A stretch of DNA of 49,831 bases, from positions 85,054,246 through 85,104,076 of the forward strand of contig NC_068990.1 of NCBI RefSeq assembly GCF_001194135.2, in the 5' to 3' direction. The notes under the pieces were generated by a model. The model searched no databases. It was not told where the DNA came from and saw nothing but the letters and a program-made list of their open reading frames with translations. Every line of letters begins with the position of its first letter. The stretch's first letter is position 1. A program made the translations under genes and the position numbers. This document shows, piece after piece, positions 1,613-49,831 of the stretch. This DNA comes from Octopus bimaculoides. Its lineage: Eukaryota.

Positions 1613-4075
1613 TACAGTTCAAAACATAGAATGTGTACATACTGTTCAGTCAAAGTTATAATACAACATTCATCCAATGCATACAAGTGTGCACAATACA
1701 TACATATGTACGTACAAACGAATACATGTACAGTCTCACACACACGCACACACACACATACACACACATATAACACACTCACACATTCATATGTGCACAC
1801 ATACATACTCCCACAGAGTTCTATAAATTTGGTGACATAGCATATTCGTCATTCCTATGAAACCTGAATAAAGTATTGTTCCTATAAGATGTGCCAGATT
1901 TGATATAACAGACAGATGACAGCAAAAGGTTAACTTAGTTTCAAAAATATATTTATTTACTCAGTTTTGTGTACATTGTATTCATGTTGTGTTCTGTCTG
2001 ACAAAACGTATTTTCTGAACAACAACGTCATTTGTCATGTTTCTAACTGGTCAATTATGGCTTGACTACGTTTACCATGGCGAATGTGACCGGGAGTAAC
2101 GAGGAATTATTGTTATACCACGACGTATATCCCTCCATCTATCCATCTATTCATGTATACACACACGTATATCAATATACAAACACACATACACATATAT
2201 ACACATATATACATACGCACACATACAAACACAGATATATAAAATATGGCGATCATTGGTTACATAATGCAAATTACATAATCAACTCATACTGTCAAAC
2301 CGTCAGATGTATATNNNNNNNNNNNNNNNNNNNNNNNNNNNNNNNNNNNNNNNNNNNNNNNNNNNNNNNNNNNNNNNNNNNNNNNNNNNNNNNNNNNNNN
2401 NNNNNNNNNNNNNNNNNNNNNNNNNNNNNNNNNNNNNNNNNNNNNNNNNNNNNNNNNNNNNNNNNNNNNNNNNNNNNNNNNNNNNNNNNNNNNNNNNNNN
2501 NNNNNNNNNNNNNNNNNNNNNNNNNNNNNNNNNNNNNNNNNNNNNNNNNNNNNNNNNNNNNNNNNNNNNNNNNNNNNNNNNNNNNNNNNNNNNNNNNNNN
2601 NNNNNNNNNNNNNNNNNNNNNNNNNNNNNNNNNNNNNNNNNNNNNNNNNNNNNNNNNNNNNNNNNNNNNNNNNNNNNNNNNNNNNNNNNNNNNNNNNNNN
2701 NNNNNNNNNNNNNNNNNNNNNNNNNNNNNNNNNNNNNNAAAGAGAGGCTAACTATTATACGTAATATTATTGGGTTGAAAAGGTGATAGCATTCATTTTC
2801 GTGGAGATGACTCTCAGCAGTCAGGCTGCAGTTGAATTATTTTGAGTATGAATTCCTTTATGTGCCTGCATATGGACAAGAACTCGGCGTTTTTATTTAA
2901 AATATTTGGTGGCATGATTTGCTATACTTTTCTGCGAAATATGAATGCACCTGAATAAAAAATATTTAATTTCAACTTTTCTCTAGCTTATAAAAATGTT
3001 AATTCTACCATGCTTTGGTTTACAGTTGTTTTGAGGCACGGGGGTAAAGTCTCTGGATCTAAAAGATTGCGTGTTATTTGTGTGTGTCTAATTTTAAATG
3101 TATTTCCATTTAATATGTACAGTTTCTCTCGTATGCATTGTATGCTTCTGCAGCTATTGACTTTGTTCTGTACATAAGCACCTTTGTGTGACGTTTATCA
3201 TCAAGTGGACAGGACGTGGTTTCGGTATAATCGCATTCCTGTGGCTGGATGGGTTGTTTCTTACTGTATATGTTTGGTTTCAGTTGGATGTTTGGAGATT
3301 TTAGATAAGATACAACCTAAGCAAATGTAACCTATCTAAACATTGTTCTGATATTCACGAGTTACGAGGGAAATACTTTCTTATGAGTGACAGGAAATTA
3401 CCAGCTGTGTTGGATAATACGCTCATACTATAGGGGCCAACATAAACCTGATGATGCTTCATTTCCTAGCTCTACTATTTTCATAAAACAAAAAAAAAAA
3501 AAACATCATGGACGTTGCTTGTTCTCCCTCTCACTAACTTATCAAAATCATACACATCTTTATCTGTTTCTAATAGTTTATTTTTGCTAAAGAATATTTA
3601 TCACGAAGACTGCTTCTTCTGTCATGTTTCTTTCAACACCTCTCATAATAATTTGTTACGTACAGCAATGATACATTCCTTTCATGTCTGATTTCTCACA
3701 GTTTATACTGGGTCGTCCCTAAGATGTTGTTTATCGTTCTGTTATGATTGTTTTCACAGTAGCTTATGGTTAGAATCATAAACAACATCGTCATCTTTAT
3801 CAGCAACAATATCAACAGTCACGGTACAGAACAGAAATATTAAATGTATGCACGTTCTTAGACAGTCTGCTCATTTTGAATAGATCTCTTACGCGTTGAT
3901 AACATTCTTTGCATAAAGATATATTGTTTTGTGCTTTCTTTCGCGAAGGAATGTTCAATGGTATTACCTTCACAAATTCCAAGTTATGTCTATTTACGAC
4001 CCTTTATAAGATTGTAAATTTTTGCTCTTTGTATCAACAACTACTCTTTATGGACAAGAAAAGAACAACTAAGCA

Positions 4076-4140
4076 GTTGTTCGACCTGATACAAATAGTA
4101 GTGAATTCCTCCTCGAATCACATTCTTCAATCTTACCAAA
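4076..4140 (+). mobile_element. Fragment of the (AAC)n-tailed interspersed repeat family (core gacctgctagaaatagcagccaaatctccc)
   Basis: tcgacctgatacaaatagtagtgaattcctcctcgaatcac aligns by eye to the copies at 25566-25809 and 32320-32492. Confidence 0.5.
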
Positions 4141-4981
4141 GTCTCAATGCGGTCTCTTGAGAGGCTGCTAAAACAATCGAATCTCTCTCAAATTACGTCC
4201 ACCTAAAAAAAGAAAAGAAGAAAAAAACTACTCTAGGATAGGAGTATAAAAACTACTTCTCTTTACCAAGCTATGCTGAACCAGTGTAGCAGAGTAAGCT
4301 CATCTCAAGCTCAAATTCACGGCCTCCATACCAGACCGTGGTTCGTGAAGAGAAAATGCTCAGGTCTTCGTCTTGAAATGGACTGAACCTGGGCAATCCA
4401 ATCCAATCCATACCGTTTCAAAGCATGCTTTTCTTCCATTTGGCAGGGTTTTCCTTAGGAAACTTTCCGTTCGCCTTATTCATGGATAACCAGTGGCACT
4501 AGCCAAGAGGTGAAAGAAGAAGATGTGAACCCAATGTTTGCAACAGACAACTCTACTAAAGATACTCAATTGTTAGGTGGACGAGTTAAAATAGTCGGGA
4601 CGTCATATACAGACATGCACACACGTACAAACAAACAAACATACATACATACACATAAGTCTATGTGGTGTTAATTTCGTCTACACGGTATTTTTACATC
4701 AGTCATATTAGCGTTTGGAATCTGCAATCCATTATGCGTTTCTCTTTCCATTATCTCTCAGTCTCTTTTCATTCTTCTCCTCGTACGTCTCATTCTCTCA
4801 TCCGTTACATCTCTTTTATCTGTTCCTCTTCTCCTTTTTTTCTTTCTCCTCCGTTTCGTCTGTCATTTCTTCATGTTTTTCTCTTTTAATTCTACCACCC
4901 CACCTTGAAATTGCTTCTCTCATCTTCGTTACTTTCTCTGTTACATCTTTGTGTTGTTTGTGTGTTGTTGGTGTTGCTTAG

Positions 4982-5044
4982 TCCCAGGTTAGCCCTGATC
5001 AAGCAGGCTTATGATCTCAAGCGCTTCAGCTGAGCCGTCTCATC
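4982..5044 (-). mobile_element. 3' fragment of the (AAC)n-tailed repeat family
   Basis: cccaggttagccctgatcaagcaggcttatgatc is the reverse complement of the family 3' end seen at 26123-26200 and 29580-29645. Confidence 0.5.
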
Positions 5045-5336
5045 ATTTAGTATATAACGATGCTAGAGTCCAAAGGATCCTTGATTTTTTTAAAAGAATA
5101 GGGACGTGACTGAGGAAAATTTGCTTACGAGTTTTAGCAGGTCGAGCGATTCCATAAAAGTTCTATTGCTGGCACTTTTAGTATGCGTACCTTGTATTTG
5201 AAAGTGTATGAGTAGGTGTGTGGATATATATGTATAAAGTGTTTGGTTCGAGAGCGTTTGTATGTCTTTGGTGAGTAAGGTGTGTAAATAACTATGTGTT
5301 AGTGAATAAAATGTGTGAGCATGTGAATGAAAGAAT

Positions 5337-5338
<2 letters not shown>

Positions 5339-5429
<91 letters not shown>
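5339..5429. repeat. (GT)n microsatellite, ~45 units
   Basis: Perfect GT run. Confidence 0.98.
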
Positions 5430-5433
<4 letters not shown>

Positions 5434-6049
5434 CGCAAGTGTGTGAAAGCATACTTGAGTGAGTGAGCAAATAAGTGTGAAAGTAAGTGTGTGAGTCAAT
5501 CAGTGAGTGAGAGAATGTCTGAGTGTGGATGTAGGTGAGTGAAGTGGCAAATGGAGAAGTGTGCCTGGTTGGCTATGGGCTGTAAAATAATCTTACGAAA
5601 TTAGTTGAACCGTTTATAATTAGATAAAAAGATCTATTAAAGGCTATTTGTGCAAATAGGTGCAAGAAATTAGGTTTATTCAGCCGTGATGCCTATTATT
5701 TAGCATCGGTAGTTTTAAAATGTGAAATCAGTCACGCGTGACCAGTCTTCTTACCTTCCTGAAGGAGAGTCCATTCGAAACAGCTTCCAGCAACAACAAT
5801 TATAACAAGAACAACAATTATAACAAGAACAACAACACGAAAGAAAAACAACAGAAGGGATATGAAACAAACAGGAAAAAGAACGTACACACCCTGCAAA
5901 ACCTTCACAACAAAAACAACAGCAAGAACAATAACAACCAGCTAACAGCCAGCCTCAAAATCTAACTAAAATCACACCTCACTTTCTTAAGCTTTCAAAG
6001 TTACATAAAATCGTGTAATTATAGACGTACTATTCCCGAAACAAAAAAT

Positions 6050-46638: not shown

Positions 46639-46642
<4 letters not shown>

Positions 46643-46701
<59 letters not shown>
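46643..46701. repeat. (CG)n-(CA)n microsatellite
   Basis: Directly visible. Confidence 0.95.
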
Positions 46702-46704
<3 letters not shown>

Positions 46705-47058
46705 TGATACAAATGCTCAAAACGAAGAAAGAAATCTACATAGGAAAAGAGAACGAAATATCAACTCCAAAATTCACGTGTGCACTTGACCCCACAACCA
46801 CCATTAACATTGCACACACGCGCATGCACGCATTCACTCTCTTTTCCTCTGTCTGTCTGTCTCTCAAACACACATACACACACAACCATATACGTACCCC
46901 TCTCTCCAAACTAAACCACTTTCATCCTTCTCCCCCCACCTCACACACAATTAGATTATTCTCTCTGCCTTTCTTTCATTCTCGCTTCCTTTCTTCCTAA
47001 TTTTAATTTCTTTTGTATCTGTGAATCTGTATCTGTCTGTGTGTCTGCCAGTATATTC

Positions 47059-47111
<53 letters not shown>

Positions 47112-47147
47112 NNNNNNNNNNNNNNNNNNNNNNNNNNNNNNNNNNNN

Positions 47148-47198
<51 letters not shown>

Positions 47199-47477
47199 TA
47201 CAGCCTTGGCCAAAAGTATTAGGCCACCCCCAATGTTTTGGGGTTCTGCTATCTCAATGTTAATGAAACTCGTGCGCATGGTAGATTATGGTGTATTTCA
47301 CAATATGCATTAGTTTTAATATCTGGTTGACCCTCCTTTAGTTATCGCTTTTATACTGTACTGTACTTATGCAACCAATTATGAGTTAGACCAACGTCCA
47401 AAATTAACTTATGTTTCCTTGATTATTTCAGAGTTTTATGCTAAAATACGTTGTAGATACGGCTAATAAACAGCAAA

Positions 47478-48294
47478 ATGCCTAAAAGAAGGAAGTTGAG
47501 TGAGTGTGAGCGAGGTCAAATCGTAGCTCATCATGAAGATGGAATGTTTCAAAGACAAATTGCCCAGAAGATGAAATGTTCTCGACGTGCAGTGCAAACG
47601 ACTCACAAGCGCTTCAGAGAGACAAAAGATGTGAAGACAATGCAAAGAACAAGGTAGAAAAAAGGTTACATCACCTCGTGATGACAGAGCCATCATCCAT
47701 CAGTCACTCAGAAACAGGAGAAAAACATCGTTGGAGCTCAGTATGGACTTCAACGAGGCAAGTACTTCACAAATATCAACCAGAACTGTTAGAAGAAGGC
47801 TTGTAGAGTACGGTCTGAAAGGCTGTAGAGCCAGGAAGAAGCCATAGGTTTCTGAAGTGAATATAGAAAAACGTCTTCAGTGGGCCAAAAACCGCTCAAA
47901 TTGGACCGGTGAGGAATGGTCGAAAGTAATATGGTCTGATGAAAGTAACTATGAGGTAAGATAGTACATGTATTCAATCAACATATAAACTTAATGTAAC
48001 TGGTTTGTTGCCCAAAATATATATAAAAAAAGCACCCAACATATAGCTAATATTATTTTTCATGTTTTTACTCAGGTTTTCAGTACATCTGGTGCAACTT
48101 TCGTGCGTCGCAGAGTTGGGAAAGCATTTAAGGCTGAATGTCTGGTACCAACCGTAAAACATGGGGGTGGTTCTATCATGGTGTCAGCCTGCATGTCTGC
48201 TACAGGATCCGAAGAAGTGTTAGGGAAGTATGAATTCAGCTACCAATGTTTCTATGTTATCGGATGTTTTAGAGCCATCAATTGCTAAATTGCT
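47478..48294 (+). pseudogene. Decayed intron-containing Tc1 transposase (exon 1 47478-47955, exon 2 48076-~48294)
   Basis: MPKRRKLSECERGQIV...QRQIAQKMKCSRRAVQ (HTH), GRKKVTSPRDDR, ARKKP*, RLQWAK...W..EEWSKVIWSDESNYE | VFSTSGATFVRRR...PTVKHGGGSIMV...GSMNS..SMLSDVLEPSIAKL. Frameshifts near 47652 and ~48220; TAG at 47845-47847. Confidence 0.92.
47956..48075 (+). other. 120-nt phase-0 GT-AG spliceosomal intron inside the Tc1 transposase
   Basis: Donor GAG|gtaaga, branch-like ctaat at 48047-48051, pyrimidine tract, acceptor ttttactcag|GTT. Removal restores a continuous WSDESNYE-VFSTSGATFVRRR. Confidence 0.85.
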
Positions 48295-48310
48295 GAATTG
48301 CATCCAGGAG

Positions 48311-48379
48311 CGTCGCCATCTCTTCAGTTATCTGGCCATCGAAAAATGCTAATGGCAGATAACTGAAGAGATAGCGGCG
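48311..48379. other. 24-bp inverted repeat (22/24) with short spacer
   Basis: cgtcgccatctcttcagttatctg at 48311-48334 and cagataactgaagagatagcggcg at 48356-48379. Confidence 0.9.
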
Positions 48380-48986
48380 TGGGTTTCCACCCCGACATCC
48401 GAAAATCGGAGTTTTATCATGGTTACCGAATAATTGTCACATATTATTTACAGATAAATTCCTCTATTTACATAATATCGAGGTCTCATTCTTTCTTTTG
48501 TTGTCTTACCTTTTCTATCAATATATATATATANNNNNNNNNNNNNNNNNNNNNNNNNNNNNNNNNNNNNNNNNNNNNNNNNNNNNNNNNNNNNNNNNNN
48601 NNNNNNNNNNNNNNNNNNNNNNNNNNNNNNNNNNNNNNNNNNNNNNNNNNNNNNNNNNNNNNNNNNNNNNNNNNNNNNNNNNNNNNNNNNNNNNNNNNNN
48701 NNNNNNNNNNNNNNNNNNNNNNNNNNNNNNNNNNNNNNNNNNNNNNNNNNNNNNNNNNNNNNNNNNNNNNNNNNNNNNNNNNNNNNNNNNNNNNNNNNNN
48801 NNNNNNNNNNNNNNNNNNNNNNNNNNNNNNNNNNNNNNNNNNNNNNNNNNNNNNNNNNNNNNNNNNNNNNNNNNNNNNNNNNNNNNNNNNNNNNNNNNNN
48901 NNNNTATATATACATATATATGTATGTGTGTATAGATATATATATACGCATTCATGCACAGGAACATATATATACGTATATATGTG

Positions 48987-49026
<40 letters not shown>

Positions 49027-49309
49027 TATGCATATGCATATCTCCATACACACGTGCGCGCGCGCATATATGTCTGACTTCCACGTTATAAGATTCTCCA
49101 TGTGATATTCCCACCTCTTTATTAATCTCTAGATTAGCTCTTGAAAAGTTTTAACTCTATTATCAACAACGGCCCACTTCCCACTTCCCCCCAACTGAAA
49201 CCTCGAACCGCCATATTCCTAACACCTAACTAAATAAACACCCACCCACTCCCCTCACCCTTAAACAACAAAAATAAACAATTTTGAACACTTTCGCATT
49301 AATACAAAT

Positions 49310-49810
49310 TTACATGCACACACAAATATACGAACAGTAACATAAACGTAATATTCGTACACACACACACACACACACACGTACACACACGCATGCACAC
49401 ACACACAAAGCTATTCTCATATTAGTATTTCTTATAGAAAATATCATATCCAAACACACACTCAAACATACACACACACACACACACGCACACACACACA
49501 TACAAAGAAGCACAAAAAGTATGTACACACAAGCGCGCACAGAAACATTCATAAAACTATACACACTCATAAATACACTTGTATACATACATAGATGCAT
49601 ACATGCATACATACATGCATGCATACATACATATATACATACATACATAGTGCATACAGACATACATATATGCATAACATACGCATACATATATACATAT
49701 ACAGATGCATACATAAATAAATACATACATGCATAGACACATATATACATATACAGACGCATACATACATACATACATACATATATACATATATACATGC
49801 ATACATACAT
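49310..49810. repeat. Compound (CA)n/(CATA)n low-complexity tract
   Basis: Directly visible. Confidence 0.9.
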
Positions 49811-49831
49811 ACTTAGACGTATTCATAAAGA

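What the first reader, a model, noticed from the sequence alone, without database searches (positions are those of the whole stretch)
47201..48294. Tc1 transposase interrupted by a canonical spliceosomal intron just after catalytic Asp1
Seen: exon 1 ends WSDESNYE (GAG|gtaaga). A 120-nt AT-rich segment follows, with an in-frame TAG, ctaat 25 nt upstream of the acceptor and a U-rich tract ending ctcag|. Coding resumes in phase 0 with VFSTSGATFVRRR...PTVKHGGGSIMV, exactly the sequence expected next in Tc1. Established: most Tc1/mariner genes are intronless. Exceptions include C. elegans Tc1, Minos and the TLEWI group from bivalve molluscs. Inference: an intron-bearing Tc1 lineage in a cephalopod with an intron inside the DDE domain, offering splice-level (e.g. 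germline versus soma) control of transposition. The splice signals look better preserved than the ORF, which has 2 frameshifts and a stop.
Basis: partly seen in the sequence, partly recalled or inferred. Interest (0 to 1): 0.78.

Follow-up and report, generated by a model that had tools for sequence, protein, structure and literature searches.

The report
Dead octopus Tc1 transposon with intron
This is a broken, truncated copy of an octopus Tc1 transposon whose 120-base interruption is a genuine ancestral intron, found at the same codon in related transposons of beetles, a butterfly, a bee and an ant, but no spliced RNA was seen in octopus.

Summary
A Tc1-like element starts at TA|CAGCC (47201). 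Its reading frame stops at GAG|GTAAGA (47955|47956). A 120-nt, 74% A+T segment ends CTCAG| at 48075, and coding resumes in phase 0.

The segment is not a local insertion. Octopus DNA runs hold roughly 100 copies, with equal depth over exons and segment and no copy lacking it. An independent O. sinensis copy carries it too.

A GT..AG interruption of 113-120 nt lies at exactly this codon boundary in nine related lineages. Two are intact two-exon elements (343 and 344 aa, DD34E). Six are insect loci whose gene models splice it out, in Anthophora, Danaus, Holotrichia, Trachymyrmex and two Acanthoscelides families. These sequences form one clade (85/100 bootstraps). Eighty other Tc1 loci are uninterrupted at the site.

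It is not TLEWI, which is DD36E, lacks inverted repeats and is low-copy. It is not Minos-like either: that intron lies 36 codons upstream.

In 12 octopus RNA runs, 11 of which had reads or contigs on the stretch, no splice junction appears and transcripts run through the segment. The splice sites decay like the rest of the element.

Verdict: a decayed member of an apparently undescribed two-exon Tc1 clade. Germline/soma splice control is untested speculation.

The parts
47199..47200 (.). TA target dinucleotide at the left end of the element, inside a (TA)n(GA)n microsatellite
   Evidence: Sequence read. The O. sinensis copy L001 also begins TA|CAGCC after (TA)n. The right-hand TA cannot be checked because the copy is truncated.
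47201..47346 (+). Left terminal inverted repeat. Its first ~30 nt (CAGCCTTGGCCAAAAGTATTAGGCCACCC) are conserved across the clade.
   Evidence: Window 47231-47346 matches the right end of L001 in inverse orientation at 88.8%. The termini TACAGCCnTGGCCAAAAGTATTAGGCAC recur in L004, L087, L088, L092 and L093. DNA depth here is about 5 times that of the interior.
47478..47955 (+). Exon 1: paired-like HTH DNA-binding domain up to the first catalytic Asp (WSDESNYE). Broken by a 1-nt insertion at about 47651/2 and a TAG stop at 47845-47847.
   Evidence: HTH_Tnp_Tc3_2, E=3e-18; 86% identical to O. sinensis LOC115214815.
47956..48075 (+). 120-nt phase-0 GT..AG intron. Donor GAG|GTAAGA, candidate branch point CTAAT at 48047-48051, T-rich tract, acceptor CTCAG|G.
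   Evidence: Present in all family DNA with no intronless joint. Homologous position in nine other lineages. Retained in all RNA seen.
48076..48315 (+). Remnant of exon 2 (VFSTSGATFVRRR...TVKHGGGSIMV...MNSATNVSMLSDVLEPSIAKL), with an 8-nt deletion after 48221 and an 8-nt insertion at about 48288-48295. Family homology ends at 48315.
   Evidence: Alignment with L001. Indels seen in family contigs.
48316..48533 (.). Unrelated high-copy sequence that replaces the 3' half of the element, followed by an assembly gap (48534-48904). Not part of the Tc1.
   Evidence: Homology to L001 stops at 48315. RNA depth rises from under 10 to 50-140 per sampled run. An internal inverted repeat lies at 48311-48372.

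Best explanation
The window holds a dead, 3'-truncated copy (47201-48315) of a Tc1-family (DD34E) cut-and-paste DNA transposon of an octopus. The family has on the order of 100 copies. Its transposase gene has two exons. A short AT-rich U2-type GT-AG intron, 120 nt in octopus, sits in phase 0 five codons after the first catalytic aspartate, between ...SDESNYE and VFGTSG.... This intron was gained once in the ancestor of a Tc1 subclade that now occurs in insects (Coleoptera, Lepidoptera, Hymenoptera) and cephalopods. It has kept its exact position and a length of 113-120 nt while its sequence diverged almost completely. In a working element the host spliceosome must remove it to join the DNA-binding half plus the first Asp to the rest of the catalytic domain. 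Unspliced RNA would usually give only a DNA-binding protein of about 160-175 aa, because 8 of 10 lineages have a stop within 2-16 codons. Shown here: the anatomy, presence across the whole family, the conserved position, intact exons in relatives, and monophyly. Inferred: that the intron is actually spliced in living hosts, which rests on sequence signals, intact flanking ORFs and six gene models. In the octopus the copies examined are decaying neutrally and the little RNA seen is unspliced.
For: The sequence signals and exact restoration of the ORF are.

Family-wide presence in octopus: depth over 47956-48075 equals that of the flanking exons in 4 DNA runs. No 47955->48076 joint exists (complete joint list for X17). 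The O. sinensis copy L001 has unrelated flanks and carries the same 120 nt.

Intact two-exon relatives: L003 has a 118-nt intron and a spliced 344-aa product. L004 is 1570 bp with 30-bp perfect inverted repeats, a 116-nt intron and a 343-aa product. Both are DD34E, and their intron lengths are not multiples of 3 and contain stops.

Same-site introns in insect genomes, removed by the deposited gene models: Anthophora 115 nt, Danaus 113, Acanthoscelides 117 and 114, Holotrichia 117, Trachymyrmex 116.

All 80 other Tc1 loci from metagenomes are uninterrupted at this site.

The intron-bearing sequences are monophyletic: 90/100 with 5 sequences and 85/100 with 16.

The inverted-repeat termini are conserved across the clade.
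Against: No spliced molecule was observed. Three raw RNA runs and nine RNA contig sets from two octopus species labels gave no junction. At least six RNA contigs and the raw reads cross the boundaries unspliced. Power is low: about 29 raw reads, none at 99% identity or more to this locus. Transcripts of decayed copies embedded in host RNAs need not splice. Gene models are predictions, not transcripts. The tree is neighbour-joining on about 340 columns.
Confidence: 0.85

Rival explanations
1. Regulated intron retention: the intron acts as a switch, as the third intron of the P element does. Splicing happens only in some tissues. Elsewhere the unspliced RNA yields a DNA-binding-only protein that represses transposition.
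For: Retention would end translation 2-16 codons after the donor in 8 of 10 lineages and leave a complete HTH domain. Intron position and length (113-120 nt) are conserved across phyla. Octopus transcripts retain the segment.
Against: Early stops are expected by chance in 70-80% A+T sequence. One lineage has no in-frame stop before a frameshift (Danaus) and one reads through in frame (P0124). No conserved sequence or RNA structure is present in the intron: z-scores run from -2.3 to +1.2 with a mean near 0. No tissue comparison was possible, and the retained RNA in octopus comes from dead copies.
Confidence: 0.12
2. The 120 nt is a locus-specific or secondary insertion, such as a MITE or other small mobile sequence, that merely looks like an intron.
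For: It is AT-rich, short and interrupts a transposon ORF.
Against: It is present in essentially all of the roughly 100 family copies, with depth equal to the exons and no empty-site joint. It is in an independent O. sinensis copy. It has no terminal inverted repeats and no TA duplication at its ends, and no other copy of the segment is in the window. Its depth is not above the element's own. The same boundary is used in nine other lineages with unrelated intron sequence.
Confidence: 0.01
3. A split transposase: the two halves are separate genes translated independently, and the spacer is never spliced.
For: ORF callers report two ORFs (HTH, then DDE_3) in L003, L004 and many Logan contigs.
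Against: The break falls inside the catalytic fold, five residues after the first Asp. The second ORFs have no conserved start codon: their Met residues lie at varying places in intron-derived sequence or are absent. GT and AG sit exactly at the boundaries in all 10 lineages.
Confidence: 0.04
4. A domesticated host gene derived from a transposase, as proposed for TLEWI, and not a transposon.
For: An exon-intron structure is typical of host genes (10.1101/656579).
Against: High copy number, long inverted repeats with a TA target, MITE-like deletion derivatives, and stops and frameshifts in the copies examined here. Exons and intron are equally diverged between the two copies, about 88% against 90%.
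Confidence: 0.02

Closest known systems
Canonical Tc1 (DD34E) transposons: C. elegans Tc1, Sleeping Beauty, Passport and similar
   Same: TA target. Inverted repeats that begin CAG and contain TGGCCAAAA, which resembles the Tc1 terminus as I recall it. Paired-like HTH plus DDE_3 transposase of about 343 aa. A 34-residue spacing between the second Asp and the Glu in family members L001, L003 and L004.
   Different: Most are a single ORF, and 80 of 80 sampled metagenome relatives are uninterrupted at this site. From memory, and not tested here, the 41-nt intron of C. elegans Tc1 lies in the N-terminal DNA-binding region.
Minos (Drosophila hydei) and Minos-like two-exon Tc1 elements
   Same: A Tc1-family transposon with inverted repeats whose transposase has one short spliceosomal intron. 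The intron is shared by a whole clade, seen as many exon-2-only ORFs.
   Different: The Minos-clade intron lies between ...GYKFYK and AKEKP..., 36 codons upstream of the SDE motif. That is between the DNA-binding and catalytic domains. It is 60-69 nt long (L091 491-559; 60 bp according to PMC2874221). Minos falls outside the clade in the tree. The two introns are therefore independent gains.
TLEWI (Tc1-like elements with introns, bivalve molluscs; Puzakov et al., 10.1101/656579)
   Same: Tc1-like transposase genes in molluscs that are interrupted by GT-AG introns.
   Different: TLEWI is DD36E, generally lacks inverted repeats and target duplications, is low-copy and has 2-5 introns. It was found almost only in Pteriomorphia and was reported absent from cephalopods. 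The octopus family is DD34E, has long inverted repeats, about 100 copies and one intron.
P element third-intron retention
   Same: Only by analogy: a DNA transposon whose full transposase needs host splicing, and whose unspliced RNA would encode a DNA-binding truncation.
   Different: A different superfamily. No evidence here for tissue-specific splicing or for a repressor protein.

Membership tests
Tc1 family (DD34E) of IS630/Tc1/mariner | N-terminal paired-like HTH DNA-binding domain | tested here: met
   HTH_Tnp_Tc3_2 E=3e-18 and HTH_23 E=2.7e-8 on the conceptual product.
Tc1 family (DD34E) of IS630/Tc1/mariner | DDE catalytic triad with 34 residues between the second Asp and the Glu | tested here: inconclusive
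   The window copy keeps only the first Asp (SDES) because it is truncated at 48315. Family member L001 reads FQQDNAPCY...(34)...NPIEH. L003 and L004 are also DD34E. The feature is met for the family and cannot be tested in this copy.
Tc1 family (DD34E) of IS630/Tc1/mariner | Terminal inverted repeats flanked by a TA target duplication | tested here: inconclusive
   The left TA|CAGCC... and left repeat are present. The right end is lost in the window. L004 has 30-bp perfect repeats, and L001 has an inverted match of about 96-116 bp.
U2-type spliceosomal (GT-AG) intron | GT donor, AG acceptor, pyrimidine tract and branch-point-like motif | tested here: met
   GAG|GTAAGA ... CTAAT ... TTATTTTTCATGTTTTTACTCAG|G. 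GT..AG is present in all 10 lineages.
U2-type spliceosomal (GT-AG) intron | Removal restores an uninterrupted, homologous reading frame | tested here: met
   There is no gap at the junction against intronless transposases. Spliced L003 and L004 give complete proteins of 344 and 343 aa.
U2-type spliceosomal (GT-AG) intron | Position conserved in homologues while the sequence diverges | tested here: met
   Same codon boundary in 10 lineages. Intron identities are 43-54% in forced alignments, which is near noise for AT-rich DNA.
U2-type spliceosomal (GT-AG) intron | Spliced transcripts observed | tested here: not met
   No junction was found in 12 octopus RNA runs and boundaries are crossed unspliced. 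Depth was low and the copies are decayed, so this does not test active elements. RNA of species with intact copies could not be queried.
TLEWI | DD36E catalytic signature | tested here: not met
   The family is DD34E. The TLEWI definition is in 10.1101/656579.
TLEWI | No inverted repeats or target duplication, low copy number, 2-5 introns | tested here: not met
   Long inverted repeats and a TA are present. Summed contig depth is 3000-6000 against about 50 for single contigs, giving about 100 copies. There is one intron.
Minos-type two-exon Tc1 | Intron of about 60 nt between the DNA-binding and catalytic domains (K|AKEKP) | tested here: not met
   The octopus intron is 36 codons further downstream and twice as long. 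Minos is in a separate clade.

The most novel reading that the evidence does not exclude
A horizontally spreading Tc1 clade, found in insects and cephalopods, keeps a length-constrained intron of 113-120 nt immediately after the first catalytic Asp. Host-dependent or tissue-dependent retention of this intron would produce a DNA-binding-only inhibitor. That would be P-element-like splicing control in the Tc1/mariner superfamily, and the intron would also act as a filter against expression in hosts that cannot splice it.
Probability: 0.1. Interest if true: 0.7.

Novelty: new member of a known kind. Interest (0 to 1): 0.4.

Why it matters
Introns are rare in Tc1/mariner transposases. Known cases include Tc1, Minos, TLEWI and some fungal elements (10.1101/656579). 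This work adds an independent case with clear properties. The intron was gained once, sits inside the catalytic domain, and has kept its position and length across a clade that spans two phyla.

The practical consequences are these:
- Annotation pipelines split such elements into two ORFs or mis-model them.
- The intron is a convenient marker for tracing this lineage and its horizontal transfers.
- Intact members such as L004 offer a simple system to ask whether a cut-and-paste transposon depends on, or is regulated by, host splicing.

For the octopus genome itself the copy is an ordinary decayed repeat.

Tried and rejected
- MITE or local-insertion idea: rejected. There are no inverted repeats or target duplication at the ends of the segment, no extra copies in the window, no excess depth and no empty sites.
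- TLEWI membership: rejected.
- Homology with the Minos intron: rejected after finding the Minos-clade intron position in L091.
- Structured or conserved intron RNA: nine introns were folded and z-scores centre on 0. The intron alignment shows only one short shared motif between octopus and bee.
- Metagenome scan for more intron-bearing members: it returned 80 loci, all uninterrupted. They served as the control set instead.
- Orthology of the window and L001 loci: rejected, because the flanks share no similarity.
- Literature searches for a described DD34E clade with this intron, or for octopus Tc1 elements: nothing relevant in the held library. Repbase could not be consulted.

Full report
**Observation.**
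- A Tc1-like element begins at TA|CAGCCTTGGCCAAAAGTATTAGGCCACCC (47199-47200|47201) and the ATG is at 47478.
- The frame reaches ...WSDESNYE at 47955 and is followed by GTAAGA.
- Bases 47956-48075 are exactly 120 nt and 74% A+T. Read-through gives VR then TAG.
- A CTAAT lies at 48047-48051, and a T-rich tract ends CTCAG at 48075.
- From 48076 the same phase reads VFSTSGATFVRRRVGKAFKAECLVPTVKHGGGSIMV.
- The conceptual product matches Pfam HTH_Tnp_Tc3_2 (E=3e-18). Aligned with uninterrupted Tc1 transposases, the two halves abut without any gap.

**Anatomy of this copy.** It is dead.
- Compared with the family it has a 1-nt insertion at about 47651/2 and a TAG at 47845-47847 where most copies have TGG.
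- It also has an 8-nt deletion after 48221 and an 8-nt insertion near 48288.
- Family homology ends at 48315. The second Asp, the Glu and the right inverted repeat are therefore missing.
- From 48316 an unrelated, much more abundant repeat follows, and then an assembly gap.
- The left inverted repeat is long. Window 47231-47346 matches the right end of another copy in inverse orientation.

**The segment belongs to the whole octopus family.**
- The best protein hit is an Octopus sinensis predicted protein, 86% identical over exon 1.
- Its locus, L001, is an independent copy: the flanks share no similarity with the window. It aligns at about 88% over 47198-48315 and contains the same 120 nt (90% identical). 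Its acceptor is mutated from AG to TG and it has a 9-nt deletion.
- L001 supplies the missing 3' half and shows the DD34E signature, FQQDNAPCY...NPIEH.
- In four DNA runs of two species labels, summed contig depth over the element is 3000-6000. Single contigs have a depth of about 50, so there are on the order of 100 copies.
- The depth over 47956-48075 equals that of the flanking exons. No contig joins 47955 to 48076. The complete joint list for a fifth run shows the same.
- Variants at the GT and AG (47956 G>A, 48074 A>G, 48075 G>T) make up 3-8% of depth, like other positions. The splice signals are therefore not specially protected in octopus.

**RNA.**
- I laid three raw RNA-seq runs (about 6% of each is read) and nine sets of RNA contigs on the region.
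- Coverage is a few reads. None of the 29 raw reads on 47860-48170 is 99% or more identical to this locus.
- Depth runs straight through both boundaries. At least six RNA contigs cross the segment unspliced, for example 47897-48159, 47887-48164, 47832-48221 and 47860-48170.
- No junction was listed and no loose ends sit at the splice sites.
- So there is no evidence for splicing in octopus, but the test is weak. The transcripts come from decayed paralogues, probably inside longer host RNAs.

**Relatives elsewhere.** This evidence decides the nature of the segment.
- ORFs that stop just after ...SDESN[FIY]E led to three contigs.
- L003 comes from a JGI metagenome. It has GAG|GTACGT...TTTTTTTACAG|ATT, a 118-nt interruption, and both exons are intact. 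The spliced product is 344 aa and DD34E.
- L004 is a Logan contig. It is a complete 1570-bp element with 30-bp perfect inverted repeats (ACAGCCTTGGCCAAATGTATTAGACACCCT) and a 116-nt interruption. Its spliced product is an intact 343-aa DD34E protein.
- Neither length is a multiple of three and both segments contain stops. These elements can therefore only encode a transposase if the segment is removed from the RNA.
- The third contig, L002, ends 45 nt into the segment, after GAG|GTATGT.
- A second protein search and locus look-ups found the same boundary in six insect loci, and in each the deposited gene model removes the segment. They are Anthophora plagiata (115 nt), Danaus chrysippus (113), Acanthoscelides obtectus (117 and 114, two families), Holotrichia oblita (117) and Trachymyrmex cornetzi (116, a RefSeq model).
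- One further contig ORF (P0124) reads through a 120-nt in-frame version.
- Lengths are 113-120 nt, with a mean of 116.6. A+T is 70-80%. All begin GT and end AG after a pyrimidine-rich tract.
- Intron sequences are essentially unalignable, at 43-54% identity.
- The terminal 30 nt of the inverted repeats are conserved across these elements.
- As a control, all 80 Tc1 loci returned by a metagenome scan are uninterrupted at this site.

**Phylogeny.**
- In neighbour-joining trees, the intron-bearing sequences form one clade. Support is 90/100 bootstraps with five members.
- With 16 members it is 85/100. That set includes exon-2-only ORFs and was compared against 36 uninterrupted Tc1 transposases and the Minos group.
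- The simplest reading is a single intron gain in the ancestor of this Tc1 subclade.

**Comparison with known intron-bearing elements.**
- TLEWI is defined by DD36E, general absence of inverted repeats and target duplications, low copy number and 2-5 introns. It was found almost only in pteriomorph bivalves and was reported absent from cephalopods (10.1101/656579). Every one of these features differs here.
- For Minos, I searched with the transposase sequence (best hit Q24397_DROHY, 97% identical).
- Its relatives show many exon-2-only ORFs that start near AKEKP.
- In the Minos-like contig L091 the intron is AAG|GTATGT...CAACAG|GCA at 491-559, 69 nt long. It lies between ...GYKFYK and AKEKP..., 36 codons upstream of the SDE motif.
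- The published Minos intron is 60 bp (PMC2874221). The two introns are therefore at different positions in different clades.
- From memory, and untested here, the C. elegans Tc1 intron lies in the N-terminal region.

**Mechanism.**
- Shown: the structure, the conserved position, and the dependence of intact elements on removal of the segment.
- Inferred: the host spliceosome removes it. Unspliced RNA would be translated into the DNA-binding domain plus 2-16 extra residues in 8 of 10 lineages.
- Whether such retention is used for regulation, as in the P element, is open.
- Early stops are expected in AT-rich sequence. The introns show no conserved motif apart from a 17-of-20 match between octopus and bee. 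They show no consistent RNA structure either: z-scores run from -2.3 to +1.2. I put that reading at about 0.1.

**Novelty and limits.**
- Searches of the held literature found no description of a DD34E clade with this intron, nor of octopus Tc1 elements. Repbase and Dfam could not be consulted, so the family may already have a library name.
- The kind of thing, a Tc1-like transposon with a spliceosomal intron, is known. This is a new member with an independent intron position.
- The main gap is the lack of any spliced transcript.

Noticed in passing
window 48316-48533: The Tc1 copy is cut off by an unrelated repeat that is far more abundant in RNA. Depth is 50-140 per sampled run, against under 10 over the Tc1. 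It starts with an imperfect inverted repeat (about 48311-48372, CTCTTCAGTTATCTG...CAGATAACTGAAGAG). It could be a SINE-like or other small element and was not identified.
   Followed up: partly
window 47247-47320 (left inverted repeat) and joints 47322->47707, 47535->47958: DNA depth over the inverted repeat is about 5 times that of the element's interior. The same internal-deletion joints recur in three independent DNA runs. This suggests MITE-like non-autonomous derivatives of the family.
   Followed up: partly
window 46640-47200 and 48905-49831: The element sits in a compound microsatellite landscape ((CA)n, (TG)n, (TA)n, (GA)n, with many N gaps). Its TA target lies at the end of a (TA)n(GA)n run. 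The O. sinensis copy L001 is also inserted next to (TA)n. RNA reads pile up on the microsatellite (depth over 1000).
   Followed up: no
window 48000-48019 and L085 2047-2066: The octopus and bee introns share a 17-of-20-nt stretch, (G/C)TTTGTTGC(C/A)CAAAAT. The introns are otherwise unalignable, and this could be chance.
   Followed up: no
introns in L003, L004, L085, L087, L088, L090, L092, L093 and the window: Intron length stays within 113-120 nt in ten lineages from hosts with very different typical intron sizes, although the sequence has turned over completely. This may reflect a length constraint or simply few indels.
   Followed up: partly
protein P0124 (Logan contig, 385 aa): One clade member has a 120-nt in-frame intron without stops. 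The ORF caller therefore reports a transposase with a 40-residue insertion (VRTIVILNK...SLFFKQ) right after the first Asp.
   Followed up: no
L091 491-559 and the exon-2-only proteins: The Minos-type intron (K|AKEKP) is also shared by a large clade. Dozens of Logan contigs carry exon-2-only ORFs of about 214-218 aa that are 50-80% identical to Minos.
   Followed up: partly
L085 2267-2326: The Anthophora gene model uses a second 60-nt 'intron' (GT..AG) that merely skips a stretch with stop codons in a decayed copy. This shows that gene models alone are weak evidence for splicing.
   Followed up: no
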